Below are positions 7,314 to 41,536 of a DNA stretch of 64,000 nucleotides, piece after piece. The notes under the pieces are model-generated. The model ran no database searches and was not told the DNA's origin. It saw only the letters and a list, made by a program, of their open reading frames with translations. The stretch is from Macrostomum lignano (Eukaryota), in NCBI GenBank assembly GCA_002269645.1, contig NIVC01001462.1, positions 222,036 through 286,035 on the forward strand. Reading direction: 5' to 3'. Position numbers and translations under genes: made by a program. Position 1 is the first letter of the stretch. Each line of letters opens with the position of its first letter.

Positions 7314-10300
7314 TCACGTGAACTTAACCAGGTACCTCGGTGTGGCCTGCTCTGGCCGGTACACTATGTACTCATCATTGACGACTCCTCCAGTGTTCTT
7401 GGTATTTCTTTTAGCAAACACAGAATCGTAGCCGGCAGCTCGAATCGAATCCAAGGTCAGGTCATGCCTGGGTGCTTTGCACAGCATTGTCTTGCCAAGA
7501 ACAACCTCGCACAATAGCAGAGTCTTCACTCCGCTCTCCCTACAGTACTGGGCGCTCTTTGTAGTGTCGGTGGCAAAATAGATACCAGCACCAAACATGC
7601 CTTTAGATCCGATGCGAAATCCATCCTTGATAATGCTCTCAGCGCTACTGCCGGAAGTTCCGTGAATGAGCAGTTCTGGGGAGCAATTTTTTTTAAATAG
7701 TTCATTATACACATTGTACAGACGCCCATCCAGAGTTGGATTAACAATCCTTTCAATGCTTTTCACTTGGACACTGATTTTGTGCTCCGGTTTTATGTAG
7801 CGCATTACTCTATCGTGGATTTTAACGTATTCCAAAGCGGTCTCTTCGCTGTCTTCGTTTAGTATCGTACGCTCGGTGCCGCCTCTGCCGTCCCGACTGC
7901 CGTCAGCCAGCCGCTCCGTGTGAATCTGGGACGCCAGTGACCAGCACTTGGAGCAAAATCGATTGTTCATTCGCCGACAGGAAGTTCGCCAGTCAAGCTC
8001 TTCAGTGTGGCCGCAGTCAAAACGTCTTTTGCACTTCTCCTGCAAGAAATGGAAGGAAAAGTTAGCAAATTTTCTTAAAGAATAAAAGATGAAAAACGTA
8101 AATGAGCATACCCGAATCTGCTTCGCGATCTCTTTGAGCACACCGTAGCTGTGCTTAAGCTGATCCACCTGCTGTTTGATCTCGTAACGGTTTCTGGGAT
8201 TTAGCTTCATAATTTGTTGAGCCAATCGACCGACTTCGTCAACTCTAGTTTTGAGTCTATCAGTCTCGGAGCATAAATCGTTTAGTCGTTTATCTTGTTG
8301 CTCCAGCAACTGACTTTGCTGCTGTTGCATCCGCTGCTCCTGTTGTTGCATGGATGGAGACGGTGCAAACATCTGAAACAGGCCTGCTCTTTTTGGATTA
8401 AAAGGCTGACTCGATTTTTCCGCATCCTGCGCTGAAGCTTCGTTCAAGATAGCAGTCATGGTCTGTTCTATCTGAGTTGTACACTGCCGCAGTCGTGTGG
8501 AAAACTGTTCGCGCATTTGGGCGGCCTCGCCGAAATCCGGTGGGGTGGCCGCTTCCTCTTCGTAAAGAGTTGGCGGCTGTCGTTGCTGCTGCCTATCCGC
8601 ATGTTGCTTTCTACGAAAATTTTGATGGCGTCGATCGCGAAATGAGCCGGATCGGTGAAACTGTTGATGGAAATCTGTGTCTTCTTTAACTATAGCCTCG
8701 GCACCTTGAGAGCCAACGCGTCCATCTGAAAGTTGCTGAGGCCCTTGCCGGTTCATTACAGCCTCAGCTTGAGCCGGCAGAGACTGCATGAAACTTGTCT
8801 GAAATAAACAGTACAAAAGGAATTCTCGATGTATAATTTAGGACACAAATATTACTGAATAGAACTCATTGAAGACTCATTTTTATCCTTACCTGTGCCG
8901 GTGTGACAGCTTCTGAGGTTGTCTTCCAGTTGTCCGAACGATGGCTGGAGTCGCCGGTATGCGACAGCTGGAAGGGCGATAGTTTTCTCAAAATGTAGCA
9001 TCTACATTGATCATTATAAGATATTTTTAAGCATCAATCATCAACTTGTTGATAAACTTTGAACGTGTGTCAGAGCACTTGTAAAGTAATTTTAAAGCGA
9101 TTAAAGCAGCTTTACTAGTACTTTGATTGATCGATCGAAAAGCCCTCACCTGCAGATGCAGATGCTCAATCGCTTCTTTCAGTCCGGCATAGCTCTCTTT
9201 TAGGTGTCGCACCTGCTGATCTATCTCACCGCACAGCTCAACGTTACCAGAATTGCCCTTGACAAGTTGCCGTCCAAGCCAAGAAACGGTGCTCACGTTG
9301 CTCCACCGTTCTTCCACTTCGCGGCTCACGCTTGGCAGACGGACACTCGAGTCGCCACTGAGATCGGCTGCATCGGAAATGCTTAGCACTGTCTTCATGG
9401 TGGCCTCGATCCAGGCGCGACACTCTTCCAGACTCTCGTGGTAGGAAGGTTGAGGACGCCTGCATGGGGTTTTTGAGCAGGTTTTTAAAGTTCTTTGCTT
9501 GATGTCATTAAAGTTACAGGTATTCCATTTTGTTAAGGCAGTCGTTATTTTTCCGGTGACCGGACGAATGGCCTTTTTACTATTTGTCCGGTCAAATTGC
9601 TAACTGATGAATATTCTAGATTTTTAAGACTTTTTCACGTATACTGATTAATATTTTGTTGTATACTAGTAGACACTAGTGTACATGTATAAGAAAAGCA
9701 GTGTATTCAATTCGGCATAATTTGGTGTATAAGACAAACATTAGTATAACAACATAATAATCAAGATACGAGTAAGAAGTCTTTGAAGTCTAGGATCACC
9801 CTTGTAGTTTCTATAAAATAGATATTTTAGCATTATCAATTTAACCGGTCAAATAATAAAAAGCCTATTTGTCCGGTATTAACCAGATGAACGGGAAAGC
9901 AATGGCCATTATCCAGTAACCGGACAAATAACCACATCGCTATTCGTCCGGTCACCGGACATATAACAACTGCCTTTTGTTAAATTTACGCCTACACTTT
10001 TTAGCTTTAGCTTGGTCAACGTAGTTACCAAAAAATTGTTTACCATCGCAATAATGTCAGTTTCACGAGTGACTACAATCTAAACTGATTTTAGAAAGGA
10101 ATTTTCCTACATCTATAAATGGCAACTGTTGATGACAATTGACAGCTGGATTTCTGACGCAAAAAAACAGCAACAGAGGCACTCACTAGCTACTGATTAG
10201 TAACAAATATGAATGCAAGCCAAGCGACAGCATCACAATGCAACAATATCTTACCTTTGAGCACCATAACCCCTGCTGCGACTGCCGCGCATTGATTGGC

Positions 10301-12683
10301 TACGAACAAAGTTTCCCATGGAGGAAGTCGGCCCTGCCGTCTTGACAGGGTAATTCTGCTAGAATGAATGAAATCACATGAATATAATAATACAAATAAT
10401 ATTGGATTACACCCACCTTAATGGACCGCAGCTATTGCGCGTTGCATCTGAAGGCTCATACGGCTGTTCAGTCCAAGGACTGGCGGGTCGCCACACACAC
10501 CCTCAATTACCCCAGCTAATGCTGGCACCCATTTTACAGCTGGGTGAACTGAAGCAATGAAGATTTAGTGTCTTGCTCAAGGGCACAAATTGTTCCAGTG
10601 GGACCAGAATCGAACTGCCGACCTTCCAAGTCGTGAGTCCGACGCTCTAACCACTAGGCTACAACCCCAATGTCATAAAGGTTTAATGATAGTTGTGAGC
10701 ACACTGAGCACGATTGATCTGCACCTTGGACTAGACTTTGAAACTACTTTGAAACATGAAACAGCTCTCATACTCGTAAGTGTACATGTACTCGTAGCTC
10801 GTAGTGTGATCAAAAGACATCACCCAGAATCACTTTAAATGTGCAGTACAATTGAAAAAGGTTCAATCACCAAAGCAATTTGCTGGAGTCTTGACAGGTC
10901 CAACTGCTACTGGATGCATTTGAGACAAGCACTTAATTGTTAAGGTTGCAGCAAATGCAGCAGAAGTTGAGCGAATAGTTTCAGTTAGTTGTAAGCTTTC
11001 GATTATCAGTAGAGCTCTGAAAAGCGACCGATAAACATTGAAAATTGTTGGTAGAGACGCTGAATTCCAGCGGTACGCAACAGCCTGCAGATGGTTGAGA
11101 GAAGGCAAGAGTTTTCCGAATGGCCTACCATTCTTGATCCAGTGGTTCATCGAATTTATCTGGATGAGACTGGACTCAAGATTCGGACTCGAAGAAAACG
11201 ATCAATAACTGCTTTAATGGTGCAGTCTACTCGACGTTAATGGACTGAATTTCCAACAACAGGCGCCCATCATTATATGGATGGTACGCGGTTACAAAAT
11301 GGAGCTCGGATTCCGGAATTACATCAAGGCGGATTCAGCTCATCCAAATACTATCATATTCTACGATTATGAATTTATGAGAGGTAATTACCCGGTGTTG
11401 GTACAGTGACAATAGCTCAAATTAATTGCATTACACAGCTGTAACTCGTGGTTGGGTTACATAGCCGCTATGGACAAATTAAGTGCTACTGTGCCACCAT
11501 ATCTTGCTACCATAGACAAAAACTCCATCACTTTAGCAAACAGACCTTGGATTAAATTCAATGTGTGCTACCCATTGGGCTGCAAAAAGCTATACCTGCG
11601 CCACTTGGTATATATTTCATAAAGGTGTTAAAGTTGCCTGCAGATTTCTAATCAAAAGTAAAAACATTAAGAAAAAGCACTTACATCTAAATGCAGCTGC
11701 TGAGCTTGACTTTGAGACTGACCCGTTCGAGTTACAGGTGCAGCTCGAACAGTTGTAGGGGCTGGCTGAGATGTGGCAAGCTGAACTACAGGTGCAGCTT
11801 CAGCAGTTGTAGGAGCTGGCTGAGGTGTGGCAAGCTGAACTACAGGTGCAGCTTGAACAGTTGTAGGGGCTGGCTGAGTTGTGGCAAGCTGAACTACAGG
11901 TGCAGCTTGAACAGTTGTAGGGGCTGGCTGAGTTGTGGCAAGCTGAACTACAGGTGCAGCTTGAACAGTTGTAGGGGCTGGCTGAGGTGTGGCAAGCTGA
12001 ACTACAGGTGCAGCTTGAACAGTTGTAGGGGCTGGCTGAGATGTGGCAAGCTGAACTACAGGTGCAGCTTGAACAGTTGTAGGGGCTGGCTGAGATGTGG
12101 CAAGCTGAACTACAGGTGCAGCTTGAACAGTTGTAGGGGCTGGCTGAGATGTGGCAAGCTGAACTACAGGTGCAGCTTGAACAGTTGTAGGGGCTGGCTG
12201 AGATGTGGCAAGTTGAACTACAGGTGCAGCTTCAGCAGTTGGAGCTGGCTGAGGTGTGGCAAGCTGAACTACAGGTGCAGCTCCAGAAGTTTGATTCGCA
12301 GGTGCCGACTGATATTGAGCATCTAACGGAGCAGCCTGGACAACACATTTCGCACTTTCTGAGGATTCTTGCTTGGGTAAAGTCGTGGTTTCTGCAGAGC
12401 AGTCAGCAGAAAATAGTTGAAAGCCACTCGATTCACCGCATTCGGAGCAAAACTTGCTGTCCAGTTCATCGGCTTCCTCTTCACATGAGATACAGCTCTT
12501 CTTCCACAAATCAATTTGGTGTAGGCATGGCGACGCAGAAAGCAAACATTTCGAGCAATAGTATTTAAAAAACTCTTTTTGTCCGCATCGTGCACAAAAC
12601 TTAGCGTGCAACTTCTTAAGTATTGTATTGCACTTCAAACATTTTTTATACAAATTAGTTGACAGATTATTACAACTGTTCAT
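7314..12683 (-). CDS. Zinc-ribbon / PTQ-repeat / spectrin-like / PARP catalytic domain protein (~965 aa)
   Basis: Exons 12683-11685, 10355-10255, 9459-9150, 8967-8893, 8798-8112 and 8039-7314, with GT/AG sites and compatible phases (0,2,0,0,0). N-terminal CxxC...KFCxxCG motifs. C-terminal LIHGT, GMFGAGIYFATDTTKSAQY and NDEYIVY...QATPRYL (tankyrase-like H-Y-E catalytic domain). The link from the first exon is inferred from phase only; the PARP part is firm. Confidence 0.75.
9537..9974. mobile_element. MULE (Mutator-like) MITE in intron
   Basis: ~35-bp TIRs GGCAGTCGTTATTTTTCCGGTGACCGGACGAAT; perfect 9-bp TSD TTTTGTTAA (9528-9536 and 9975-9983). Confidence 0.85.
10425..10670 (-). mobile_element. 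tRNA-derived SINE
   Basis: A/B-box head (TAGCCTAGTGGTTAGAGC...GTTCGATTC), central CCTTGAGCAAGACAC...CTGTAAAATGGG domain; second copy at 25490-25725. Confidence 0.8.
11735..12290 (-). repeat. Coding 54-bp minisatellite (~10 copies, AAPVVQLATSQPAPTTVQ)
   Basis: Seen directly in the DNA and in ORF 11667-12758. Confidence 0.9.
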
Positions 12684-14829
12684 GGCTGATAACTTTTGGT
12701 CTTTATTTTCTTGTTCAGCAGAACATAAATTGTACATAAGAAAATTTAGAAGTAACAAATTCTTACATAGACTTAGAACTGCGATTCGTGGTGTTACGCC
12801 TTACGCCGTTACGGTGAAAACAGTCAAAGCAGAGCTAGAGACGATCAATCAAAACTTACAAGCGTGAAGTTCGTATATTATTTAGAATACGAACATATAT
12901 ATCGAATATATATCCAAGACATGGAATCTGCAAATAGTTTACAAATGAACTGTCTTTTAAAGACTGCAGAAATACGGCTGACGAAGAGCACTGCACACAG
13001 CTATAAGTTCCTTATTTCCGCGCCTAGCTATTCAGCCGCGAAATCGAAAATCGCCGTTCTAGGAATAAGTGTTATTTAAAAACGCGCGCTTAATTTAGTA
13101 TAACAAATTAAAAGCACGCAAGCAAGCAATCAAGTAAAAGTCTTGATTATTTAGGACAAGATATTTAAAAGTTTCTTAATGTGAAACTTAATGACTTTAA
13201 AGCGCATTTTATCGTGCTAAAACAAGCACCCACTGCACTGGCATATAACCTTAATACTGAAACCACTGAAAACTGAACTGAAATCGATTTTTAAAGAATA
13301 CAATATAATGGAGCTAGGCAATAGTATAGCCTGATTTGGCTTTTTTATAATGTATAATACGTACTGTAATTGCTTTAAATGGGCATTAGTACCTATTCGA
13401 CCATTTCCTTAAAGGAATTTTGACCATGCATAAAATTACCATGCATAGGCCTAAAATATGGCTGACACTGACATATAAGACAATAAAAAAAGTGCTAGGC
13501 CTAACACAACAGACTTAGCAGTCTTAGCTCAGGGTATGGCCTATCTGGGTTTGGCCTGTGTTTGCATCAAAAAAATTTAAATAGGCCTAAAATTCTGCAA
13601 ACTTGAACATATCATTGTATGTAGTGCTCAATGCTGTGCTAGTAGAGTTAAGGTTGAAGTAAGGTCTATATAATATAGACTAAAAACTAAAATATAAAAA
13701 TCTTACCTTAGTAAGCCTTGGCTGCTTTGCTGTTTGCTTGGTTTTCTGCCTGAATTATATTCTGGGCTTATCAGGTTAGGTTGTATATTCTATATTAGTA
13801 TGTATTTTAATTAGACCTAGGGCCTAGCTAATTTAATTAGGCCTAAGCTAAGCTAAGAAATTGAGTTGATTGATATATTTACTAGGCCTACTAGGCCTAC
13901 TAGGCCTAGCCTATAATATAAGCATTAGACTTGGTTGTAAAATCTAGATTCTAGATTTTTATACCTAGCTTACCTAACCAATTCCTATTTACTAAGACAA
14001 TTTTTCTTGATTTAATTTGTTCCATTAGGGCCTAGGACTAGGTTGGTTTCATCTTTTCATTTACTGATTTGGTATAGCCCCTAATTACCCAAATATGACA
14101 ATGCCACTTTTGTATTCTTTTATACCAATCAAGTTTTTAAGCTAAAATATTTTTTTATCTTTAGTTTTGACTTATAACATAGCTAATACATAGGGCTACC
14201 TATCAAAAATAAAACCAACTGAATCTGAATTTCAACATAGCTATAGTCTAGATCATGCTAGTGCATACTTAGTTGCCTACATAGCCACACTCTCAAGTCT
14301 AAACTAGTCATAATATTGCAATAATAAATGACTTTTTTGCATTATGACAATAAATGACCTTTTTGTGCTATATCAAAGACCCTTTTAGCTGATATTATTT
14401 ATCTTTCTTGCTTATCCTAATTATAACAAAAAACTAGCAATCTTTGCCCCCCCCATAAAGGATATCTAGATAGAATCTTTGTTCTTTACAAGTAAAAAAT
14501 AGACAACAAAAAATCCCAAGACAGCAAACATCCCAGACAACAGCATGTAAATATCTCCTAAATAGCAAGCATCCCCCAAATAGCAAGCTCCTCCCTAAAT
14601 ACAATAGGCCCTAGCAAAAAGCATCTTCTAGATAGCAAACCCCCTCTCAGATAAAAAGTACCCTCTATCCCAAGAGCAAGCATCCTCTAATATTAAGTTA
14701 TCTCATATAGCAAGCATCTTTCCAATAGCAAACATCCCCCTAATAGCAATAATCTATCCTTAAATATCAAGCATCTACCAAGACAACAAGTAGCTAGTGC
14801 AATAATATCATTAGCTTTATAGTGGCTCC

Positions 14830-15500
14830 TTTATGTCAGGCATGAAGCTTCTTTTTACATTTGAAATGGTGTTTCTTTATGTTTGACATGATGGCTCTTT
14901 TATGCTTGACATGGTGGCTCTTTAATTTTTGACATGGAGTCACATATATGTTTGACATGGAGTCACATATATGTTTGACATGGAGTCACATATATGTTTG
15001 GCATAGAGTCACATATATGTTTGACATTGAGTCACGTATATGTTTGACATGGAATCATGTATATATTTTACATGGTGGCTCTTTTATGTTTGACATGGCT
15101 CTTTAGTGTTCAACATGGTGGCTCTTTAATGTTTGACATGGTGGCTCTTTAATGTTTGACACAGTGGCTCTTTTATGCTTGACATGGTGGCTCTTTAATT
15201 TTTGACATGGAGTCACATATATGTTATGTTTGACATGGAGTCACATATATGTTTTACATGGTGGCTCTTTTATGGTTGACATGGTGGCTCTTTATGTTTG
15301 ACATGGTTGCTCTTTAATGTTCAGCATGGTGTCACTTCAATGTTTACATGGAGTCATGTATATGTTTGACAAGGTTACTCTTTAATGTCTGACAAGGAGT
15401 CACAAATATGTTTGACATGAAGTCATATATATGTCTGACATGGTAGCTCTTTAATGTTTGACATGGAGTCACATAAATGTTTTACATGGTGGCTTTTTAT
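14830..15500. repeat. ~23-bp degenerate minisatellite
   Basis: Unit GTTTGACATGGTGGCTCTTTAAT and variants. Confidence 0.85.
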
Positions 15501-17051
15501 GTTTGTAATTGTAATTGTAAAATCAATTGGCAATTAGTGACTAACAATAAAAGTGTTGTAGAACTTGCAGCATGATAATTGATAAATAAATAATATAATT
15601 TTAATGATAATTAGTAATTACCAACTCATTATAAAGTATATATATATATGGTGAAGGCTATTTTTTATCTAAAAACTTGTTTTAAGAAAGAAAATATGTT
15701 TTTTCACCCTTGTTGACCAAAAAATGAAGTATTTATCATTTCTTTCTATAAAAATTACATCACTATTTCATTCATTTTAAAGAAATTTTGATTGTTTGCA
15801 TGTTCAAAATTTCAAAAGTATTGGACTATTGATAAAATTTGAAAATTTTATCAAAAGTTACCAAAGTCTAATATTGTCAAAAAAGTATTGGCTTCTAATA
15901 CTCCGATACCCAAAATGTATTGCCAATAGTATTGGAGTATCAGAGTATCGGAATTATGCCCAAAACTGACAATAATCCATGTCTCAGCTAGTGCAATAAT
16001 ATTAGTACTAATGAATATATAGCTTTCCATTTTTGAGATTTGGGTTCCTTGAATTAAAGATTAACAATTGGAACTCTATGAGTATAAGTTCTAGTTCTAA
16101 GGATCTTGGTTTAGGATAACAAAGTTTAAGGTATTTTTTATTCATTTTATTTAATTTTTATTTGAGTCACTATGGTAATTATCCTATATAATTTTAGCTA
16201 CTTGGTTATTAACAAGTTAACTATTTTTAAGTATGGTCTTTTGTTAAAAAGGTGAATTGATTATTAAAATTGCCTTGGAATTTTGAGTTTAATTTATCTC
16301 AAAATTGTGTAGACTAATTAAGAAGCCCAATAAACTAATGATATATAAAGTCTTTTGTGATTTTTCAACATAGCTACAACCACACCAGACATTCTTTATT
16401 ATTGCTTTTGTTGTGCTATGTGGAACAGTGGGCATGCAAAAAGGAATGGCCCATTAGAGTTCTATGGTCAAGTGTTTAAATTAACTTGAGAAAACAAGCC
16501 ATAGACATCTCAATTGGTCATGCTATATGGAACAATGAGCCAGAATAAAAGGAATGGTTTGAGTTTTTCTACAATGACAACAAGACGCTTTCATTTTCTA
16601 TTGGTTAGTCAAGTTAAGCTATATGTAGCTTGTATAATAGGTCCACAAATATCTATACGCAATGGATGACATATCGCTGCCACCTTGCCCTTCAAGGAAA
16701 TTCAAAAAAGGCATATGAGTTTTTTTATTAAGAGTATAAAATTCTTTTGTTCACCGCATTTGGTCAACATTTGTACAGGCCAGCAGGTTAGAAGCTGTCA
16801 CTTAGCTGATTACTGCCATCAACTGGACCCTAATGGAAACTGAGCAATTTTGATGGATGGCTTGAGTTTTCACTGTAGCATATGGCGATCCCAGATCAGA
16901 ACATCAGAACAGAATTTCAACATGAATCCTGATGGAGTGACACTTGAGCAGTGGAGATTCATGTTATTTGAGTGAGAGGCGGCTGAAGCTGTTGGCCAAG
17001 CAATCACTGCTGACAGTGTGCTGGCTAGGAGCTGCACTGCAACCAATATTG

Positions 17052-18021
17052 TGTTGTATCCCCCTTCCTCGCTGGCACGGCCGGGTTGGGCGACGGGTAG
17101 CGGTGTCGGGGTTCGGGTACTAGACTGCCCAGGGCTTACGAGCTCGATCGGCGACCCCGAGGCGTACGGACACTTCGGGGGGAGGTCAAGGTTGAGAAGT
17201 CGAGAGAGAGGGGAGGGGCGGCTGTGGGCGGGCGGCCACTCGACAGCCTGGTGAGTCAAGGAAGAGAGAGAGGGCTGCGGGCGGTCGGCCACTCGACAGC
17301 CTGGTGAATCAAGGAAAAGAGAGAGGGCTGTGGGCGGGCGGCCACTCGACAGCCTGGTGAGTCAAGGAAGAGAGAGAGGGCTGCGGGCGGTCGGCCACTT
17401 GACAGCCTGGTGAGTCAGACTGAGGAGAGAGTGAGAGAGAGAGAGATCAGGAGAGTGACCCCAAGGAACACAGGCAATTGTCTCGACAGCTTACCGGGCC
17501 GGGTCGATTATAGCACTCATACACGGGAAGGCCGATCAATTGCAATAAATTGAGTCTTCGCAGTAAGAGACCATCTTTATGGTTGATCGCTGGTCACGTT
17601 CGTTTATTTATCGCAGTGGGCGCAAATGGGCGCAGGCATGGTGAGAAAAGGGGCGGGGTCTGAGCGTCGCCTTAAATAACGAGTAAAAAGGGGCAGGGGC
17701 GCAAACAAGGGGGGGGGGAGAAAGGGCTTAAACAATGGAGCTGATTGACAGCTGATTGGCTGCGGCGAGGGGAGGGTGGAAGCGCGCACGGCCAGGGAGA
17801 GGGAGAGAGAGCAGAGGCCCAGCCAATCAGCACGGCTAGCCAAAGGGCTAAACAGCCAAGGCGAGAGAGAGAGAGAGAGAAAGAGAGCAGAGGCTCAGCC
17901 AAAGGGCTCATAGCTCCAGACTGGCTTGAGCCGGGGGGGGGGTAACAATAATCAACTACCAAAGTCAACAACTATCAAAGTGCACTTGCACCAAGGGAGC
18001 ACTGTGACACAGGTCACAACA
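17052..18021 (-). mobile_element. Solo LTR (970 bp) containing an SL-like sequence
   Basis: TGTTGT...ACAACA termini, 4-bp TSD ATTG (17048-17051 and 18022-18025), GC-rich against AT-rich flanks, internal ~55-bp repeats at 17225-17420. Confidence 0.8.
17541..17582 (-). other. Spliced-leader-like sequence (42 nt)
   Basis: CCATAAAGATGGTCTCTTACTGCGAAGACTCAATTTATTGCA, compared with the M. lignano SL as I recall it (CCGTAAAGACGGTCTCTTACTGCGAAGACTCAATTTATTGCATG): two CpG-type transitions and a broken terminal ATG. Confidence 0.75.
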
Positions 18022-18700
18022 ATTGCTTGAACCGTGTTTGTAGCAACATCTGTTTTACTTGTAAGAGTTGACTTTTTAAAGTTTTGATGATTTTAATTTG
18101 TGACAAAATAGGTTTTATTTATATTAGTTTTTATTCTTTTTATAAATAAAACTCAAATTGTTCTTTCTATTCTGGCTCATTATTCCATATAGCATGACAA
18201 ATTGAGTTGTCTGTGGCTTGCTTTCTCAAGTTAATTCAATTGCTTAACCATAGAATTCTATAGGCCGTTCCATTTTGCATGTCCCCTGTTCCACATAGCA
18301 CGACAAAAGCAATATTACTTCTGTTAAGTAGTATAAAATGTATGTGCATGTAGTATGCATAGGCAAAGTACACTATTTTATTGCCTATTTTGACAAGTTG
18401 TCTTTTTAAAAACTTTCGAAGCTTTTATTCAGTCACCATAAACTGGCCCAGTGGCTCCCGAAAGTCAATTAGACCATACTAGCCTTGTTTTAAGACAGAA
18501 CTGACTCAATAAAACTCAACAGTATTAAAATCTTGTCTGGTAGAAATCGCGTGCAGAAATACTTTTGAAACAAAAATATCTGTAGAAGAGAGACACATGA
18601 ACTTCAGTCAATACACCAAACTGTATATAGTATATTTGATAACAATTTTCGATTTTTTCCTGCAGTTAGTATAGCAGACAGTTCAGTAACAATAGACTGT

Positions 18701-20127: not shown

Positions 20128-23100
20128 ATGTCCTGTCCATCAGCCTACGAATTTATTCGACGCATAGGCAAAGGCGCTTTCGGCAATGCCACACTAATTC
20201 GACGAAAATCAGATGGCTGTCAATGTGTTTTAAAAGAGATTTTGCTTAGCACTCTCAAAGACAAGCGCGAACAGAACTGGGCCCGCCAGGAGGTGCAATT
20301 GTTGCGCTCGTTTGAGCATCCCGGTATCGTTCGCTATTTTGATTCGTTTGTTCTGCCCACCTCACTGTGCATCGTTATGGAGTTTTGCGACGGCGGAGAC
20401 TTGTGCGATCGAATTGACAATCAAAAAATGCCTTTTGCCGAAGAGTTAATAATGGATTGGTTTGCTCAGCTCTGTCTGGCCTTGAAGTATATTCACGATA
20501 GGAGAATTATTCATAGGTATGCGATGCTAATGAATATAAGCGCTCTGTATTTAATGCATAGATACTATCTCTGAAGATATGTATATGCGACACAAAGGAG
20601 AGATTACGTTATTCCATCAGTCCATCGAAGGACCAGAGGGATTGTCAGCAGCCTATCGAAGGACCAGAGGGGGTTGTCAGTGGCCTATCGAAGGACCTGA
20701 GGGGTTGTCAGCAGCCTATCGAAGGACCTGAGGGGGTTGTCAGTGGCCTATCGAAGGACCAGAGGGGGTTGTCAGCAGCCTATCGAAGGACCTGAGGGGT
20801 TGTCAGTGGCCTATCGAAGGACCAGAGGGGGTTGTCAGCAGCCTATCGAAGGACCAGAGGGGGTTGTCAGAAGCCAATCGAAGGACCAGAAGGGGTTGTC
20901 AGAAGCCTATCGAAGGACCTGAGGGTTTGTCAGTGGCCTATCGAAGGACCAGAAGGGGTTGTCAGAAGCCTATCGAAGGACCTGAGGGTTTGTCAGTGGC
21001 CTATCGAAGGACCAGAAGGGGTTGTCAGAAGCCTATCGAAGGACCTGAGGGTTTGTCAGTGGCCTATCGAAGGACCTGAGGGGTTGTCAGTGGCCTGTCG
21101 AAGGACCTGAGGGGTTGTCAGCAGCCTATTGAAGGACCAGAGGGGTTGTCAGAAGCCTATCGAAGGACCAGAAGGGGTTGTCAGAAGCCTATCGAAGGAC
21201 CTGAGGGTTTGTCAGTGGCCTATCGAAGGACCTGAGGGGTTGTCAGTGGCCTATCGAAGGACCAAAAGGGGTTGTCAGTGGCCTATCGAAGGACCTGAGG
21301 GTTTGTCAGTGGCCTATCGAAGGACCTGAGGGGTTGTAAGTGGCCTATCGAAGGACCTGAGGGGTTGTCAGCAGCCTATCAAAGGACCAGAGGGGGTTCC
21401 CAGCGGCCTATCGAAGGACCAGAAGGGGTTGTCAGAAGCCTATCGAAGGACCAGAGGGGGCTGTTAGCAGCCTATCGAAGGACCTGAGGGGTTGTCAGCA
21501 GCCTATCGAAGGACCAGAGGGGGTCGTCATCGGATTTTTTAAGAGTTAGAGACATAAACTTATAGTGTATAACTATTTTACGAGTAAAATGACTATTAAA
21601 GTCAATGATAAACTTAACACTAATCTATCAACAGGGACATCAAACCGAAGAACATATTCCTAATGCGCAATGGAAAAGTTATTAAGCTTGGCGATTTTGG
21701 CGTTGCAAAAACTCTGGATTTTACTCAGCAACTTGCCGTAACAGGCATTGGCACGGCTAATTATTTGAGTCCTGAGATTGTGAAGGGAGAGGCCTACAAT
21801 AACAAGACTGATATCTGGTCCATGGGCTGCGTCCTGTACGAGTTGCTGGCTCTGAGAATTGCATTCTGTGCCAGAAATGTCAAGACGCTCTACATGAATA
21901 TTAAATTGGGAGCATTGTCGCCTTTGCCAACAAGATACAGTGCGGAATTGCGCGCGATCTGCACCGCTATGCTGAGGAAGAATCCCAAGTGAGTGAAATA
22001 CGTTTAAGTTCATTTTTTGCTACTGACAGTAGCATAATTTATTGCTGTCCTTAACTTGTCTCCATTTGTGATGACATACACGCATTTTATATGTAGACTG
22101 TGTGTACAGTTTCTGTACTGCAGGAAAGTCCACGGAAATTCCATGGAGCTCAAAAGACCAACTTAAGCGCCTCTGTGTGTACATGTACATGTACACAGTA
22201 ATTAAACTTGCTCTAAATAACTTTCACTTGTTTTTTCTAATTGCAGAGATCGTCCAGGAGTTGGAGCTCTGCTAAAGAGAGACTGCTTGCGCCCGGCACT
22301 GCTCAAGACAGTGTCCATAGATGTGAGATGGTTATTGGGATTAGTATGAATTTGGGATGTGATTTTTGTGATCAGTATAGATTTGGATTATTGGGATCAA
22401 TATAGGTTTTGGGATTTTTGGGATCAGTACATATTTGGGATTATTGGGGTCAGTATAGATTTGGGATTATTGGGATCATTAGGGTCAGTATTTATTTGGA
22501 ATTATTACGGTCAGTATAAATTTGGGATTATTGGGATCAGTACAGATTTGGGATTTTTGGGATCAGTATAGATTTGGGATTATTGGGATCAGTACAGATT
22601 TGGATTATTGGGATCAGTATGGATTTGGATTATTGGGATCAGTACAGATTTGGATTATTGGGATCAGTATGGATTTGGATTATTGGGATCAGTACGGATT
22701 TGGATTTTTAGGATCAGTACGGATTTGGATTTTTAGGATCAGTACGGATTTGGATTATTGGGATCAGTACAGATTTGGATTATTGGGATCAGTATGGATT
22801 TGGATTATTGGGATCAGTACAGATTTGGATTATTGGGATCAGTATGGATTTGGATTATTGGGATCAGTACAGATTTGGATTATTGGGATCAGTATGGATT
22901 TGGATTATTGGGATCAGTACAGATTTGGATTATTGGGATCAGTATGGATTTGGATTATTGGGATCAGTACGGATTTGGATTTTTAGGATCAGTACGGATT
23001 TGGATTATTGGGATCAGTACGGATTTGGATTTTTAGGATCAGTACGGATTTGGATTATTGGGATCAGTACAGATTTGGACTATTGGGATCAGTATGGATT

Positions 23101-26100
23101 TGGATTATTGGGATCAGTATAAGATCAGGGATTAGTAAAGATTTAGGATCATTGGAAATATTGCATTCGTCATTGCTTCTCCAGGAGCTCGCCCAGCTTC
23201 AGCTGAAACCGGCGCCTCAAGCTTCGCCTTCGCCGTCGCCGTCGCCTTCGCCGTCGCCTTCGCCGTCGCCTTCGCCGTCTCCTTCGCCGAGACCAAAGAC
23301 TCCAATAGCCGCCGGTGGTGCCGCCCAGAAGCGAGTGCTGCCAATCAATGTTGGCAACAACAATCGCAAATCTTCGGCGGCTTCCCGAGCTGTCAATAAT
23401 AGCCGAGTTGCCGGTGCCGCCTCGCCCAGGCCGGGCACACCTGGCCGGGTGCAAACCCCAGGTCGCGTCGGTGTCGGCGGCGCCAGAGGTCCAACGGCGC
23501 AGTCCCGACAAAACGACGCCCGTCGCCGAGAAGCGGAACGCGCCGCCGCCATTCGCAAAGCCTACGAGGTGAAGAAGCGACCGTCCCCGGCGGCCAGCCC
23601 ATTGTTGAAGCAGCAGCGCAGCAAGGCCGTGCAGAACAAAGACATGGAGCGTCTGTCTAAAAAGCGCCAAGAATTGGAGGAGAAGCGGCAGCACACTTAT
23701 CGGCAAGAGGGCTGGGTTAATGTGCTGTCGCCTCGGTCGCCGGCCGAGCCGACGCCCCAGCAACGGTTGCAGCAGAAGCAGCAAAAACCTGCTGCAGCAG
23801 CGGCCGCCGTTTCTGCCGCTGGAGAGGCCGCCGTGGCTGGTCGCAACGCCGCAGCCGCTGGTCGCCAGGCGGCTAATCAAGCCCAGAAACTGCTGGACAA
23901 TTTCTGGGAGAGAAAAAAGCAGCAGAAGGCTGGCGGCGGCGCGGCTGCTGGTAATGTTGCCGCGGCCGCTGCTGAGGTGGCGGAGGCTACTCGTGAGTCA
24001 GCGTTCTGCTGTTTCTACTGTTAGAACTTTAGGTACTTTAAGGTACTCTAGGGTGCTCAGTGCCAAGCATTCTGGGGGGGGAGATGGTTGGCGGTGCCAG
24101 TATTCTAGTGGTGGGGTAAGCGGTGCCAGTATTCTAGTGGTAGGGTAAGCGGTGCCAGTATTCTAGTGGTAGGGTAAGCGGTGCCAGTATTCTAGGGGTG
24201 GGTAAGCGGTGCCAGTATTCTAGGGGTGGGTAAGCGGTGCCATATTCTAGGGGTGGGTAAGCGGTGCCATATTCTAGGTGTGGGTAAGCGGTGCCAGTAT
24301 TCTAGTGGTAGGGTAAGCGGTGCCAGTATTCTAGGGGTGGGTAAGCGGTGCCAGTATTCTAGGGGTGGGTAAGCGGTGCCATATTCTAGGGGTGGGTAAG
24401 CGGTGCCATATTCTAGGGGTGGGTAAGCGGTGCCATATTCTAGGGGTGGGTAAGCGGTGCCATATTCTAGGGGTGGGTAAGCGGTGCCATATTCTAGGGG
24501 TGGGTAAGCGGTGCCATATTCTAGGGGTGGGTAAGCGGTGCCAGTATTCTAGGGGTGGGTAAGCGGTGCCATATTCTAGGGGTGGGTAAGCGGTGCCATA
24601 TTCTAGGGGTGGGTAAGCGGTGCCATATTCTAGGGGTGGGTAAGCGGTGCCATATTCTAGGGGTGGGTAAGCGGTGCCATATTCTAGGGGTGGGTAAGCG
24701 GTGCCAGTATTCTAGGGAGGGGTAAAACGGTGCCAGTATTCTAGGGGTGGATAAGCGGTGCCAGTATTCTAGGGGTGGATAAGCGGTGCCAGTATTATAT
24801 ATCATTTTGATAATAACCCAATATTTTCAATCGATCGAATCAATTTAGCTCGCAAGCCAGCAGCAGCCAATAAGCCACCGCCGCCGCCGCCTCCGCCGCC
24901 GCTGTCGCAGGTGCTGCAGGAGGTGCAAGGCCCCATACAGAAAGTGAAGCTTCAGCCGCAATCGAACGATAGTAGTACCAATAGTAATGATGAAGCTAAA
25001 TCTGCAGCTTCAACTACGAATTGTTCGGCAGACGAGAGGCGTCTGCGTAAGGAGCTCATAGCTGGCAAGCGAGCAGCCGCCGCCGCTAACGCTTGGGAAG
25101 GCCGGGTAATGAACGCGAAGCACCTGGAACAGTTGCCGTTGCAGCCGGACTCGGCAACTCTGCCGCCTAGCGACACGTTGATTGTGGCCGAGGAACTGCC
25201 GTCTCCCACTGGGAATAATGGTGACGATAAGCCGTTAACTGTGGCCGCTCGTCGCGAGGCCTGGGAGAATAAGAAACCGGGATCTACTCTGCTGCGCCGC
25301 CTGGGCAATGCTCCTCTGTTGGCTGGAACTGCCGAGTTCGATGGTGAGTTTTCGCCAGCAATACCGACATTAATTGTCGACATAATTTGATTACTGTCGG
25401 TAATGCGCGGCACATCTGAAGGCTGCGTACGGCTGTTCAGTCCATGGACTGGGGGGTCGCCACAATGCAAAGTTTAGTGCAGTGCAATGCAGGTTAGAGC
25501 GTCGGACTCACGACTAAAAGGTCGGGGTTCGATTCTCAACCTACTAAAACAATTTGTGTCCTTGAGCAAGACACTTAACTCTGCATTGCTTCAGTTCACC
25601 CAGCTGTAAAATGGGTGCCAGCATTATCTGGGGTAATTGAGGGCGTACGTGGTGATCCCACCCCCCAGTCCTTGGACTGAACAGCCGCACGCAGCCTTCA
25701 GATGCGCCGCGCAATAGCTGCGACTTAGCTGTCGGTTGCACATCTGGTCATGTATGGATGTACACAGCCTCCGATTTTTAAATCCGGCTTTTCAAGCTTC
25801 CAGATGCTTCCAAATCCCCCATGCTGTTGATGATTTTATTTGGCTCACGATACCCACCCTACATTCCCGTACACAGCCGCCGATCAGCAGGAGCGGGAGG
25901 TGCGCCAGAGCATGTTTGAGACGCTGAAGCAGCTTGAGCTGGAGGATGATGACGCCAATGAGCTGCTGGGCTCTCTGGTTGCCGAAGGCCCAGCCGCTCT
26001 GGACAATGCAGCAGACGCCGCGGCTAATAGGCGCAAGCCCACCCCGGAGGAGCTGTGGGAAGTGATTCACGGTTTCCGGGCTATGCTAGAAGAAAAGAAG

Positions 26101-30771: not shown

Positions 30772-32013
30772 GGCTGTGTCGTTGGCGGAATCTGTTGTCA
30801 AATGTGGAAGATTCAACGCGTTCTACTTTTAAATCCTTTATGCGCGAGCTTCGAATAGCTTCTATAATCTTATAGAATTCGACCTGCCGCTAAATTTCTT
30901 TTGGTCTACGGCCAACAGTCAAAAATATTTATTTAACAGCTCATTAAGAACCGCCACCTCCCATAAGCTGTTGCTACTTCTGGCAATTCCGTCATAAAAT
31001 CCTTAACAAAGACAGACAGACCTTTTAGGCATATTGTACTAACCTGCATTGTGCCAGTCTAATCATAATTTTGTTTGTTTGTTTTAACGTTGTGTTATCT
31101 ACTCTCCTGCTTATGATTTCATCAGTTTTATTAAGGTTAACTGCCTCCTTTGGCAGTATTGGCTTGTCCTTTCTACCTGCTTGATATCATATTTCTAGGT
31201 TTATGTTTCAGTCACATGTTGAGTAAATATATATACTGAAATCGTTATCGAGCTACACTGTCTATTGGGTACATTATCTGCCTATTTGTTTCTTTTTTGG
31301 CTTCCTTTTGAGCTCGATTTTATGTCAAATACTTTGACGTTTTATATGGCTACTAGAGTACGATTTAGCAGCCTTAAATTTGTCCCGATTACTAAATATA
31401 CTCTGGAGGATTGTGTTGTTAGCTCTGTCTCCCAGGTGGAGTGAATGGAATTGGCAGATATTTCTGTCTTTTACGAGCTAGCTCCATTTTCCAGTGTGGG
31501 TAAAAGCTTTTTTTGTACTTTAACGAACGATTGACACCAGTATCTTCTAGACAAAATTTCTTGCTGCTTTCGCAGACAATTTCTGCTTCTTGCAAAATCG
31601 ATTCGTTCATTCGTTGGTAACAGTTTTTCTAGCAGCACATTCTTTTATCTTTTCTATTGCTGATTTAGTAATTGCTCGTAAATAATTATGTTATTGAAAT
31701 GGTTGACCCCATTATGGGAAATTTGCTTCTTCTATTTAGGAAGCCAAAAATCCAAAATGTGACGGAATCTAATTGAATCGTAATAAAGATCTATCCTATG
31801 TGTGCTATCCTCCTGTAGAATTGGGGAAATTTAGTAAACACAGTATGTTTCTCGTCAGTTTCTACAACTGCTTAATCTCAACCTATCTGATGCCTTTTTA
31901 TCTCGGTCTGTCCATTTTAAACTAACTGACGGTTATCCATCCACATCAATTTATAAACACCTCATTTCAATTTCCAACACCTTAAAAACCCAGCCCTACA
32001 CCAAAACTTGCAG

Positions 32014-32682
32014 CCGTCACCAAACCTTACAAAGTTCACCTTAGAAGAAGCGCTCCAGCTTCTCCCAATTCACTCTTCGCAACAAGCCGCGGTGTGCGGG
32101 TTCACCGGTACAGTGGTCTATTATCACTACGGATGCGATGGCTTGAACGACGCGGGCTGGGGCTGCGGCTATCGGGCCTGTCAAACTCAGCTGCACTGGC
32201 TGTTGAGCAATTCGAAACTTCAGCATCCCGATCCGGAAGTGCCGGCCATACCCGCAATGCAATCGGCTTTAGTTGCTATGGGCGATAAGCCGCCTAGTTT
32301 TACTGGATCTCGCGAATGGATCGGCTGTCTGGAAGCCGCCTACCTTGCAGATAAATTCGCTAATCGAAGGTGTCGGATATTGCATCAGAATAGTCAATCG
32401 AGCGAAGTCAATGTCGATGTGAAATCGTTGAAGAAACACTTTGAGGATGTCGGCTGTCCAGTGATGATGGGCGGTCATACTGACGCGTCTGCTAAGACTG
32501 TTCTGGCTGTGTCAGGTTCCGATACGGATCTGTTGCTGTTGGATCCTCACTATGGCCGAGTGGTCAATAGTCCTCCGTTAAGTCTTAGTGGCTTAGTTCA
32601 CGAAGGCTGGCTCTCGTGGCGTAGTGTTGATTCTTTAACTGAGACCGCGTTTTACAATATGTGTCTGCCTTTAACTGATTGA
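32014..32682 (+). CDS. ufsp1: Ufm1-specific protease 1 (peptidase C78); start codon not in this exon
   Basis: YYHY...DAGWGCGYR (catalytic Cys), MGDKPPSFTGSREWIG, LLDPHY (Asp-His), FYNMCLP. An AG acceptor ends at 32013; no in-frame ATG between the stop at 31954 and the catalytic Cys. Confidence 0.85.
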   Translation, partial: PSPNLTKFTLEEALQLLPIHSSQQAAVCGFTGTVVYYHYGCDGLNDAGWGCGYRACQTQLHWLLSNSKLQHPDPEVPAIPAMQSALVAMGDKPPSFTGSREWIGCLEAAYLADKFANRRCRILHQNSQSSEVNVDVKSLKKHFEDVGCPVMMGGHTDASAKTVLAVSGSDTDLLLLDPHYGRVVNSPPLSLSGLVHEGWLSWRSVDSLTETAFYNMCLPLTD

Positions 32683-32789
32683 TTTGCTGTCAGGTTTGAA
32701 GTCTAGTGAAATGTTTAAATCTGGAGCAAGGTTATAATAAGGGTTGCTTAAGCCAGTAGTTTGTGAACTGCGAAGTCCTGTGTGGAAAG

Positions 32790-33300
32790 CTTGTCAAAAT
32801 ACTTAGTGAACTTTGTCAGAAGACTTGTGAAGATTGACAGAAGACTTTGTGAAGATTGGCAGAAGATTTTGTGAAGATTGCCAGAAGACTTTGTGAAGCT
32901 TGGCTAAAGACTTTGTGAAGATTGCCAGAAGATTTTGTGAAGATTGCCAGAAGACTTTGTGAAGATTGATAGAAGACTTTGGGAAGATTGCCAGAAACCT
33001 TTGTGAAGATTGCTAGAAGACTTTGTGAATCTTGGCAGAACACTTTGTGAAGATTGACACAAGACTTTGTGAAGATTGGCAGAAAACTTTGTGAAGATTG
33101 CCAGAAGATTTTGTGAAGATGGACAGAAGACTTTGTGAAGATTGACAGAAGACTTTGTGAAGATTGCCAGAAGATTTTGTGAAGACTGGCAAAAGACTTT
33201 GTGAAGATTGCCAGAAGATTTTGTGAAGATTGACAGAAGACTTTGTGAAGATTGCCAGAAGATTTTGTGAAGATTGCCAGAAAACTTTGTGAAGCTTGAA
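32790..33300. repeat. 22-bp minisatellite
   Basis: Unit CTTTGTGAAGATTGCCAGAAGA. Confidence 0.95.

Positions 33301-39003: not shown

Positions 39004-41536
<2,533 letters not shown>

What the first reader, a model, noticed from the sequence alone, without database searches (positions are those of the whole stretch)
17052..18021. Solo LTR whose predicted transcript begins with a hard-coded spliced leader (possible SL mimicry by a retrotransposon)
Seen: a 970-bp element with TGTTGT/ACAACA termini and an ATTG TSD. On its minus strand, a 42-nt SL-like sequence starts at 17582. Upstream of it are GATAAATAAA at about -30 to -21 (TATA-like, also containing AATAAA), a GC box near -70 and CCAAT motifs further up, which is the geometry of a Pol II U3 promoter with the SL at the U3/R boundary. 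Recalled knowledge: the M. lignano SL is CCGTAAAGACGGTCTCTTACTGCGAAGACTCAATTTATTGCATG. Both differences here are CpG transitions, and the terminal ATG and a following GT donor are absent, so this is not a working SL-RNA donor. Inference: an LTR family captured the host SL so its RNAs look like trans-spliced mRNAs. I know of SL-targeting non-LTR elements (NeSL, SLACS) but not of LTRs carrying the SL at their start site. Such elements could also inflate counts of SL loci or SL-positive reads.
Basis: partly seen in the sequence, partly recalled or inferred. Interest (0 to 1): 0.9.

Follow-up and report, generated by a model that had tools for sequence, protein, structure and literature searches.

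The report
Spliced-leader copy inside a solo LTR
A transposon remnant in the flatworm Macrostomum lignano really does carry a slightly mutated copy of the short leader that this animal splices onto many of its mRNAs, but one copy cannot show that the transposon uses it to disguise its own RNA.

Summary
Window 17052-18021 is a GC-rich 970-bp insertion with TGTTGT...ACAACA ends and an ATTG duplication. Its minus strand (17582->17541) matches the published Macrostomum spliced leader (SL) at 40 of 42 bases. Both differences are CpG transitions. The window is M. lignano.

New findings:
- Homology to genuine SL RNA genes, recovered from environmental contigs, covers exon positions 2-43 of 45 only. 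There is no ATG, GTAAG donor, Sm site or promoter, so the source was RNA or cDNA, not the gene.
- The 43-nt insert splits a perfect 14-bp palindrome (CGATCAA|TTGATCG), so it is a simple insertion.
- The proposed TATA box at -30 is also the only poly(A) hexamer on that strand. None follows the SL for 531 nt.
- The opposite strand gives an equally good LTR layout: AP-1/GC-box repeats, TATA core, AATAAA inside the SL complement, GU-rich tail.

So the element's orientation, and whether the SL sits at the U3/R boundary, are unresolved.

No other copy of the LTR could be reached, because M. lignano DNA is not in the searchable collections. Family-wide presence and the transcription start are therefore untested.

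Best reading: a passively carried, RNA-derived SL relic in the LTR core. SL mimicry remains possible (about 0.2).

The parts
17052..18021 (.). 970-bp LTR-like insertion (presumed solo LTR). Which strand is the sense strand is unresolved.
   Evidence: TGTTGT...ACAACA termini and ATTG on both sides. GC is 59% against 38% in the flanks. The purine skew is confined to the element. There is no second copy in the window.
17048..17051 (.). Left copy of the 4-bp target-site duplication, ATTG.
   Evidence: the joined flanks are shown.
18022..18025 (.). Right copy of the 4-bp target-site duplication, ATTG.
17541..17582 (-). Copy of the spliced-leader exon, positions 2-43 of the 45-nt SL. It is 40/42 identical and lacks the terminal TG of the ATG.
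17540..17582 (-). The 43-nt insertion as delimited by the palindrome arms. There is A/AA microhomology at both junctions, so the exact boundaries are ambiguous by 1-2 nt.
   Evidence: CGATCAA[43 nt]TTGATCG.
17583..17589 (-). Upstream palindrome arm, CGATCAA on the minus strand.
   Evidence: Only 7 of 64000 window positions have such perfect 7-nt inverted flanks at an insert length of 43.
17533..17539 (-). Downstream palindrome arm, TTGATCG on the minus strand. Joined to the other arm it gives the perfect 14-bp palindrome CGATCAATTGATCG.
   Evidence: The restored palindrome folds as a small hairpin.
17603..17612 (-). GATAAATAAA at -30 to -21 from the SL start. It is TATA-like, and it also contains the only AATAAA on the minus strand of the element.
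17672..17679 (-). Second TATA-like run, TATTTAA, 96 nt upstream of the SL start. It is the alternative TATA box if the AATAAA at 17608 acts as the poly(A) signal.
17650..17658 (.). GC box, GGGGCGGGG, at -68 to -76 from the SL start.
17755..17759 (-). CCAAT box on the minus strand. A second CCAAT lies on the plus strand at 17823-17827.
17220..17417 (.). 3.7 tandem copies of a 53-bp unit. Three of the four unit slots carry an AP-1 consensus TGAGTCA (17252, 17358, 17411); the second has TGAATCA instead. The array holds four exact GGGCGG boxes, in units 1-3, and the fourth slot has none. It looks like an enhancer array.
17509..17549 (+). The plus-strand alternative core: TATA core at 17509-17512, an initiator-like TCA(+1)ATTG with the A at 17538, and AATAAA at 17544-17549 inside the SL complement. 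A T/GT-rich stretch follows at 17575-17611.
17536..17574 (-). A 12-codon uORF (ATG at 17574-17572 in the context AAAGATGG). The C>T change in the SL copy created it. It ends at the TGA in AATTGATC.
   Evidence: Read.
17490..17495 (-). GGTAAG, which resembles a 5' splice site, 88 nt after the SL start. It is not adjacent to the SL and no Sm site follows.
16397..16575 (.). Left arm of a roughly 175-bp inverted-repeat pair (86% identical) that brackets the LTR. The LTR is nested inside an older foldback or MITE-like repeat.
18140..18317 (.). Right arm of the same inverted-repeat pair.

Best explanation
The 970-bp element is a solo LTR of an M. lignano LTR retrotransposon. It sits inside an older foldback repeat, 2.1 kb upstream of a NEK-like kinase gene.

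At some point an RNA-derived copy of the 5'-terminal 42-43 nt of the host spliced leader was inserted into its central core. Only the exon was copied. The insertion landed at the exact centre of a 14-bp palindrome that lies about 30 bp from A/T-rich TATA or poly(A)-type motifs on both sides.

The most likely route (inferred, not shown) is a detour by reverse transcriptase. The enzyme pauses at the palindrome hairpin and switches, through A/AA microhomology, onto an SL-bearing RNA: a trans-spliced mRNA, the SL RNA or the free SL exon. It runs off that RNA's capped 5' end and returns to its own template. Capture of an SL cDNA by end-joining or by the element's integrase would give the same product.

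The copy is now a passenger. It cannot donate in trans-splicing because it has no GT donor and no Sm site. It has lost the terminal AUG and carries CpG transitions and a new uORF.

Its practical effects depend on the strand transcribed. Minus-strand transcripts through or from the LTR contain a 32-nt exact SL core and would be scored as trans-spliced. Plus-strand transcripts carry 42 nt of antisense SL with an AAUAAA.

Whether transcription starts at the copy, and on which strand the LTR is read, is unresolved.
For: Shown directly:
- The SL identity and its statistics.
- Homology to two genuine macrostomid SL RNA genes (L003 615-723, L004 1589-1698) stops at the exon. The window sequences downstream and upstream of the SL copy show no similarity to the SL RNA introns or upstream regions (shuffle p = 0.38-0.89). 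The two introns align strongly with each other (score 80, p = 0), although their upstream regions do not (p = 0.22).
- The genuine genes fold into the three-hairpin SL RNA shape (z = -3.3 and -4.3). The LTR segment does not (z = -1.0 and +0.3).
- Perfect 7-nt inverted flanks restore a 14-bp palindrome when the 43 nt are removed. Such flanks are rare in the window (7 of 64000 positions).
- The insertion signature of the element: termini, target duplication and compositional jump.
- Signs of decay or non-function: no ATG or GT, a uORF, no Rfam hit.

Precedents from the literature:
- LTR-element RNAs can be SL trans-spliced, as shown for Cer1 (PMC3315495).
- SL relics are carried into DNA by reverse transcription in dinoflagellates (PMC5585692; PMC12014239).
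Against: - There is only one copy, so 'passenger' is not demonstrated.
- The position is not random-looking. The SL start lies 21-29 nt downstream of one of only two non-SL A/T runs in the element. That would fit a capture at a replication junction (U3/R) or selection for that position.
- The two substitutions keep the small 5' hairpin (CCGU/ACGG becomes CCAU/AUGG). This could mean selection, or a variant SL as the source. By my estimate it is a 1-in-2 outcome once both CpGs have decayed.
- The inverted flanks could be a selected RNA stem rather than a split palindrome.
- The LTR identity itself rests on the termini and target duplication alone.
Confidence: 0.55

Rival explanations
1. The minus strand is the LTR sense strand, the A/T run at -30 is the TATA box, and transcription starts at 17582. 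Element RNAs of a whole family therefore begin with a hard-coded SL, and R is roughly the SL. They imitate trans-spliced host mRNAs, or, in a stronger form, the host SL serves as the R repeat.
For: - The minus-strand motif order is GATAAATAAA at -30 to -21, a GC box at -68 to -76 and CCAAT at -177.
- The 5' end of the SL copy coincides with the 5' end of the real SL to within 1 nt. That is expected if it marks an RNA 5' end.
- U3/R is a true replication junction where 5'-terminal extras can be fixed (established retroviral knowledge).
- An initiator-like TCA lies at the junction.
- CATAAA at +2 and a GU-rich stretch after the SL could end a roughly 30-40-nt R.
Against: - No canonical poly(A) hexamer lies downstream of the proposed start for 531 nt. 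The only AATAAA is inside the proposed TATA box.
- The AP-1/GC-box tandem array would sit in U5, which is unusual.
- The terminal AUG is lost and a uORF has been gained.
- The junction sequences do not fit a trans-splice junction: there is no AG before the joined sequence, and the SL is 2 nt short.
- A genome-encoded leader would receive an m7G cap, not a TMG cap.
- There is no evidence from any second copy.
Confidence: 0.2
2. The plus strand is the LTR sense strand. The SL was captured in antisense, and its complement now forms most of a short R region and supplies the AATAAA poly(A) signal.
For: - The plus strand has the canonical order: 3.7 x 53-bp repeats with AP-1 and GC boxes upstream (17220-17417), a TATA core at 17509, TCA(+1) at 17538 (29 nt later), AATAAA at 17544, CA dinucleotides at 17561 and 17572, and a T/GT-rich stretch at 17575-17611.
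- The plus strand of the element is 62-64% purine, the usual bias of retroelement sense strands (the trend itself is from my own knowledge).
Against: - The TATA core is weak (TATAGC).
- U5 would be about 450 nt long.
- There is no replication-based reason for an antisense SL to sit at the RNA 5' end, so the capture would have to be at the DNA level, with the fit to R a coincidence.
- CCAAT and GC boxes would then lie downstream of the start.
Confidence: 0.2
3. Same minus-strand orientation but a different layout. TATTTAA (17678) is the TATA box, R runs from about 17650 to about 17584 and contains AATAAA (17608), and the SL copy begins exactly at the poly(A) cleavage site (the R/U5 boundary). 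It would be a scar of an aberrant first strand transfer from an SL-capped 5' end to the polyadenylated 3' end, or just a coincidence.
For: - The SL starts 21 nt after the hexamer, directly after a CA followed by an A (GATCA-A|CC). That is the textbook cleavage distance.
- TATTTAA differs from the TATA consensus (TATAWAW) at one position.
Against: - The intact palindrome formed by the two flanks argues that nothing was lost or replaced at the junction. That does not fit a non-homologous transfer, which would truncate U5.
- The GC box would overlap the start site.
- U5 would be 531 nt long.
Confidence: 0.12
4. The insertion happened in place, after the element had integrated, as filler DNA at a break in the palindrome of this one solo LTR. 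It is then unique to this locus.
For: - It is a simple insertion at a palindrome centre with 1-2 nt of microhomology.
- Capture of cDNA at chromosomal breaks is documented in yeast (my own knowledge).
- No other SL-bearing LTR was found in 241 million metagenome contigs or in the viral contigs. This is weak, because those collections do not hold the M. lignano genome.
Against: The position next to the TATA or poly(A) motif would be pure coincidence (about 2-3%). The 2-3 substitutions mean the insertion is not very recent.
Confidence: 0.25
5. It is a degenerate SL RNA gene or pseudogene, or a chance resemblance.
For: None beyond the SL match itself.
Against: - There is no GTAAG donor, no Sm site, no stem-loops and no upstream similarity to the genuine genes.
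- A 32-nt exact match was absent from 100 of 100 shuffles.
Confidence: 0.02

Closest known systems
Relict spliced leaders in dinoflagellate retrogenes (PMC5585692, PMC12014239, PMC3229502)
   Same: A genome-encoded copy of the SL exon that can only have come through an RNA intermediate. The copy decays afterwards and can confuse SL-based annotation.
   Different: In dinoflagellates the relic sits at the 5' end of a retroposed protein-coding gene. Here it is inside the non-coding core of an LTR, with no mRNA body or poly(A) tail attached, and the host is a flatworm.
SL-gene-targeting non-LTR retrotransposons (NeSL-1 in C. elegans; SLACS and CZAR in trypanosomatids). From my own knowledge.
   Same: A retroelement physically associated with SL sequence. 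SLACS transcripts start with the first SL nucleotides.
   Different: Those elements insert into SL RNA genes and borrow the host gene's promoter. Here the SL exon has been moved into the element. The locus is not an SL gene, and the element is an LTR type with a target duplication at an unrelated site.
Capture of host RNA fragments by retroviruses and LTR elements through non-homologous template switching. From my own knowledge: oncogene transduction, and tRNA or 7SL-derived inserts.
   Same: A short host-RNA-derived insert with microhomology at the junctions and a run-off at the donor RNA's 5' end.
   Different: The captured sequence here is the universal 5' tag of the host's trans-spliced mRNAs, and it lies in the LTR core. 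That gives it a possible, but unproven, regulatory meaning.
SL trans-splicing of LTR-element RNA (Cer1 in C. elegans, PMC3315495) and competition between an LTR and the SL for an acceptor site in Echinococcus ta-TRIM solo LTRs (PMC4558846)
   Same: These show that LTR-element transcripts meet the trans-splicing machinery and can carry an SL at the RNA level.
   Different: In those cases the SL is added to the RNA and is not encoded in the element.
Genuine macrostomid SL RNA genes (L003 615-723, L004 1589-1698; described for M. lignano in PMC8629364)
   Same: Exon positions 2-43 are shared (40/42 identical).
   Different: The genes have the ATG|GTAAG donor, two further stem-loops, an AUUUUUAG Sm-type site and, in L004, a U1 gene next door. 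The LTR copy has none of these.

Membership tests
Solo LTR of an LTR retrotransposon | 5'-TG...CA-3' termini forming a short inverted repeat | tested here: met
   TGTTGT...ACAACA, a 6-bp perfect inverted repeat.
Solo LTR of an LTR retrotransposon | A 4-6 bp target-site duplication directly flanking the termini, and a continuous host sequence once the element is removed | tested here: met
   ATTG on both sides. Joining the flanks gives continuous AT-rich sequence inside a foldback repeat. An empty paralogous site could not be fetched.
Solo LTR of an LTR retrotransposon | The same sequence occurs as paired direct repeats around gag-pol, next to a PBS and PPT, elsewhere in the genome | not testable with these tools
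   There is a single copy in the window. M. lignano contigs are not in the contig collection. LTR ORFs gave no protein hits, and LTR pieces gave no hits in viral contigs.
Solo LTR of an LTR retrotransposon | Promoter, start site and poly(A) signal in that order on one strand (U3-R-U5) | tested here: inconclusive
   Three layouts fit at the sequence level: two on the minus strand and one on the plus strand. No expression data are available.
SL RNA gene | An SL exon ending in ATG, followed at once by a GT(AAG) donor | tested here: not met
   The window has GCA|ATTGATCGG. L003 and L004 have GCATG|GTAAGACACCG.
SL RNA gene | An Sm-binding site between two 3' stem-loops, and the three-hairpin fold | tested here: not met
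   There is no similarity to the introns (p = 0.68-0.89). The fold z-score is -1.0 and +0.3, against -3.3 and -4.3 for the genuine genes.
Retroposed, SL-tagged mRNA (retrogene with a relict SL) | An SL followed by an intronless mRNA body and a poly(A) tract, the whole flanked by a target duplication | tested here: not met
   No coding body or poly(A) follows the SL. The duplication flanks the whole 970-bp element, which includes 439 bp upstream of the SL.
SL-targeting non-LTR retrotransposon (NeSL, SLACS, CZAR) | Insertion at a fixed site inside SL RNA gene repeats, with a non-LTR RT/endonuclease ORF | tested here: not met
   The locus is not an SL RNA gene. None of the ten largest window ORFs scanned against Pfam hit a reverse transcriptase or integrase domain.
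   Only motif geometry is available: a TATA-like run at -30 to -21. There is no CAGE or 5'-RACE data.
   No further copies could be reached.
   There is no AATAAA or ATTAAA on the minus strand from 17582 to 17052. The only hexamer is the weak variant CATAAA at +2. The sole AATAAA is at -26.

The most novel reading that the evidence does not exclude
An active or recently active M. lignano LTR-retrotransposon lineage uses the host spliced leader as the start of its R region, or as all of it. Its genomic RNA would then begin, and just before the poly(A) tail end, with the SL. Such an element would look like a trans-spliced mRNA at its 5' end. More interestingly, read-through or upstream-initiated transcripts that get genuinely trans-spliced could still complete first-strand transfer, because the host-added SL would match the SL encoded in the 3' LTR. 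The evidence here does not exclude this: the TATA-like run at -30, the match between the SL 5' end and an RNA 5' end, and CAUAAA plus a GU-rich tract that could close a roughly 30-40-nt R.
Probability: 0.15. Interest if true: 0.85.

Novelty: new variant of a known kind. Interest (0 to 1): 0.5.

Why it matters
Practical side. A genome-encoded 32-nt exact SL core inside a repeat family would create false trans-splice sites and false SL-gene hits in k-mer or adapter-trimming pipelines of the kind used to annotate Macrostomum genomes. How much this matters depends on the copy number, which is unknown.

Biological side. Reverse-transcribed SL relics are well known in dinoflagellates. Four full-text literature searches found no report of an SL exon captured inside an LTR, nor of such relics in flatworms. 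If the SL proves to be family-wide and to mark the transcript start, it would be a new way for a retroelement to exploit trans-splicing. If it is a one-off, it is a neat natural record of reverse-transcriptase template switching onto the most abundant capped 5' end in the cell.

Tried and rejected
1. Fetching other LTR copies through proteins. A concatenated six-frame query of all LTR ORFs gave no hit; the search reached 8000 candidates, which may be a cap. A window ORF and the UniRef kinase P0001 are not on record in the contig collection.

2. Pattern scans.
- The SL core in metagenome contigs gave only two trans-spliced transcripts and one genuine SL RNA gene.
- In genome contigs it gave one contaminating macrostomid contig with U1 and SL RNA genes.
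- In viral contigs it gave nothing, and three LTR-specific patterns also gave nothing.

3. Rfam has no family for the SL region or the LTR.

4. The supplements of the M. lignano LTR paper are not held. Wasik et al. 2015 is not held.

5. Rejected: SL RNA gene or pseudogene, and chance match.

6. Rejected: retrogene. There is no mRNA body and no poly(A).

7. Rejected as evidence: the 'compensatory' pair of substitutions. It is a 50% outcome once both CpGs have decayed, and in the genuine SL RNA fold the ACGG pairs with the intron, not with the 5' CCGU.

8. Rejected as significant: a 9/10 inverted match between GCGATAAAT and the SL 3' end. By my estimate it is expected by chance about 1 time in 10.

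9. ATG depletion in the putative leaders did not discriminate between the two orientations.

10. Considered but left as an idea. The SL copy ends 2 nt short, right after a CA, and that CA is joined to ATTG, the same 4 nt as the LTR's own target duplication. This looks like the product of integrase 3' processing, but the 5' junction does not fit a concerted integration.
Full report
**What is there.** Window 17052-18021 is a 970-bp block that begins TGTTGT and ends ACAACA, with ATTG on both sides. It is 59% GC against 38% in the 3 kb on either side. Its plus strand is 62-64% purine, a skew that starts and stops at the same boundaries. Joining the flanks gives continuous AT-rich sequence. The block lies between the two arms of a roughly 175-bp inverted repeat (16397-16575 and 18140-18317, 86% identical). 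It is therefore a younger insertion nested in an older foldback or MITE-like repeat. The first exon of a NEK-like kinase gene (20128-24021, plus strand) is identical to a UniRef Macrostomum lignano protein. The organism is therefore M. lignano, and the element lies 2.1 kb upstream of that gene's ATG. The window holds no second copy of the element. None of its ten largest ORFs scanned against Pfam hit a reverse transcriptase or integrase domain.

**The spliced-leader match.** The minus strand 17582->17541 reads CCATAAAGATGGTCTCTTACTGCGAAGACTCAATTTATTGCA. The 35-nt form appears in PMC8629364. [quoted passage not shown] Identity is 40 of 42. The 32-nt core is exact, occurs once in the window and in none of 100 shuffles, and BLAST gives E = 2e-15.

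**Comparison with genuine SL RNA genes.** Scanning public contigs with the SL core returned four contigs:
- Two environmental transcripts with the SL at the contig end (L001, L002).
- Two genomic contigs from unidentified macrostomids with complete SL RNA genes: L003 615-723, and L004 1589-1698. L004 sits in a contig filed under a Flavobacteriaceae MAG that also carries a U1 snRNA gene.

Both genes read GCCGTAAAG...TTGCATG|GTAAGACACCG, then a stem-loop, an AUUUUUAG-type Sm site and a second stem-loop. They fold far better than shuffles (z = -3.3 and -4.3). The window aligns to them over exon positions 2-43 of 45 and nowhere else. Its downstream and upstream flanks are no more similar to the genes' introns and upstream regions than shuffled sequence (p = 0.38-0.89). 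The two introns, by contrast, are strongly conserved with each other (alignment). The source was therefore SL RNA sequence, not the SL gene.

**New finding: the insert splits a palindrome.** On the minus strand the SL copy is bracketed by CGATCAA and TTGATCG. Removing 43 nt (17540-17582) restores a perfect 14-bp palindrome, CGATCAATTGATCG. An A or AA is shared at both junctions. Perfect 7-nt inverted flanks around a 43-nt segment occur at 7 of 64000 window positions, and in the element only at the SL for that insert length; the single other case, over lengths 41-45, is a 41-nt segment at 17153. The simplest reading is a clean insertion, without loss of host sequence, at the centre of a hairpin-prone site. 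This fits a two-step template switch by reverse transcriptase: pause at the hairpin, jump to an SL-bearing RNA, run off its capped 5' end, and return. It also fits capture of an SL cDNA at a break. It does not fit a trans-splice junction, because no AG precedes the joined sequence and the SL is 2 nt short of its ATG. A selected RNA stem is the alternative explanation for the inverted flanks. The predicted fold contains that stem but is not better than shuffles (z = -1.0).

The element has only three A/T runs of 7 nt or more:
- one inside the SL;
- one at 17603-17611;
- one at 17672-17679.

The first of the two outside the SL is the proposed TATA box. It also contains the only AATAAA on the minus strand, and no AATAAA or ATTAAA follows the SL in the remaining 531 nt. 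The only hexamer there is a weak CATAAA at +2, created by one of the SL mutations. Three layouts are therefore possible.
The TATA-like run is at -30, the start is at the SL, and R is roughly the SL, closed by CAUAAA or by the upstream AAUAAA. U3/R is a real replication junction, which would explain why the SL 5' end sits there. However, the poly(A) arrangement is poor and the 53-bp repeat array falls in U5.
- **(B) Minus strand, different layout.** TATTTAA at -96 is the TATA box, R contains AATAAA, and the SL begins 21 nt later, directly after CA, at the predicted cleavage site.
- **(C) Plus strand.** The order is 3.7 x 53-bp repeats with AP-1 TGAGTCA sites and GC boxes (17220-17417), a TATA core at 17509, an initiator-like TCA with the A at 17538, AATAAA at 17544 inside the SL complement, CA dinucleotides, and a T/GT-rich tract. 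This is the textbook order, with the enhancer repeats in U3 and the purine-rich strand as sense. The TATA core is weak, though, and nothing in replication explains an antisense SL at that spot.

In both orientations the SL segment ends up as roughly the R region. Which orientation is real needs the PBS and PPT of a full-length copy or end-mapped RNA, and neither was available. ATG depletion did not help.

**State of the copy.** It has lost the terminal AUG that all flatworm SLs carry. The C>T change creates an AUG in a strong context (AAAGAUGG) that opens a 12-codon uORF. The two substitutions keep a small 5' hairpin. Given two decayed CpGs, that is a 1-in-2 outcome, and in the genuine SL RNA the ACGG pairs with the intron instead. 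A GGTAAG lies 88 nt after the SL start but no Sm site follows it. None of this suggests a leader maintained for translation or for trans-splicing.

**What could not be done.** The decisive test is whether other copies of the LTR, especially both LTRs of intact elements, carry the SL. It was out of reach. LTR ORFs find no proteins. M. lignano genes are not on record in the contig collection. The collection scans returned only genuine SL contexts. The M. lignano LTR-retrotransposon literature (PMC12801592) and the SL literature (PMC8629364) do not mention SL sequence in LTRs, and the sequence supplements of the LTR paper (PMC12801592) are not held. Four full-text searches found no report of an SL inside an LTR in any organism.

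**Verdict.** That its transcripts start with the SL, that the capture is family-wide, or that it serves as mimicry is untested, and part of the internal evidence argues against it. My best reading is a passively carried SL relic inserted into a palindrome in the LTR core (confidence 0.55).

**Closest known cases:**
- Dinoflagellate relict SLs in retrogenes (PMC5585692, PMC12014239).
- Capture of host RNA by retroviral template switching.
- RNA-level trans-splicing of Cer1 (PMC3315495).

This case differs from all of them in that the SL exon alone sits inside an LTR. I rate it a new variant of a known kind, with moderate interest. One BLAST against the M. lignano assembly would move that rating sharply up or down.

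Noticed in passing
window 16397-16575 and 18140-18317: A roughly 175-bp inverted-repeat pair, 86% identical, brackets the LTR. The LTR is nested in an older foldback or MITE-like element about 945 bp long without the LTR.
   Followed up: partly
window 17540-17537 and 18022-18025: The SL copy stops exactly 2 nt short of the SL 3' end, right after a CA. That CA is joined to ATTG, the same four bases as the LTR's own target duplication. This resembles an integrase-processed end. It is a post hoc observation, and the 5' junction does not fit a concerted integration.
   Followed up: no
window 17220-17417: The 53-bp tandem units in the LTR carry AP-1 consensus TGAGTCA sites (three of the four unit slots) and GGGCGG boxes, giving an enhancer-like array. 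No heat-shock element of the kind reported for other M. lignano LTR families was found.
   Followed up: partly
window 20128-24021 (+): A NEK-like serine/threonine kinase gene matches a UniRef M. lignano protein (exon 1 identical). A 31-32-bp tandem array (20606-21584) lies between exons 1 and 2, and the C-terminal exon overlaps a 25-bp repeat array (22449-23220).
   Followed up: partly
window 42190-42261 (-): A tRNA-Glu (CTC) gene, found by both Rfam and ARAGORN.
   Followed up: no
window 45578-46268 and 54872-55562: A 691-bp direct duplication, 94% identical, each copy holding a PAN-domain ORF. A further 190-bp inverted copy lies at 57154-57347.
   Followed up: no
window, many sites (for example 11625-12352, 14822-15550, 22449-23220, 32737-33390, 35254-35961, 36417-37131, 39406-40900, 56631-57109, 57561-58440, 59072-59975, 60557-60997): Short-period tandem arrays (8-54 bp units) are very dense, in line with the 15% simple and tandem repeat content reported for M. 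lignano. Several of them create long spurious ORFs.
   Followed up: no
window 7314-8816 (-), 32008-32682 (+), 34645-35388 (+): Host gene exons: a PARP catalytic domain, a peptidase C78 (UFSP-like) domain and a ThiF-family (E1-like) domain.
   Followed up: no
L004 (JAGQZA010000190.1) 1121-1283 and 1589-1698: A contig filed under a Flavobacteriaceae MAG is macrostomid flatworm DNA. It has a U1 snRNA gene about 300 bp upstream of a complete SL RNA gene, plus TTAGGG-like repeats at about 270-330. The MAG is contaminated with eukaryotic DNA.
   Followed up: partly
L003 (Ga0302322_100095745) 615-723 and 1775-2923: An environmental macrostomid contig with a complete SL RNA gene about 1 kb upstream of an intronless ORF that looks like a Na/K-ATPase beta subunit. 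This is by eye and was not scanned.
   Followed up: no
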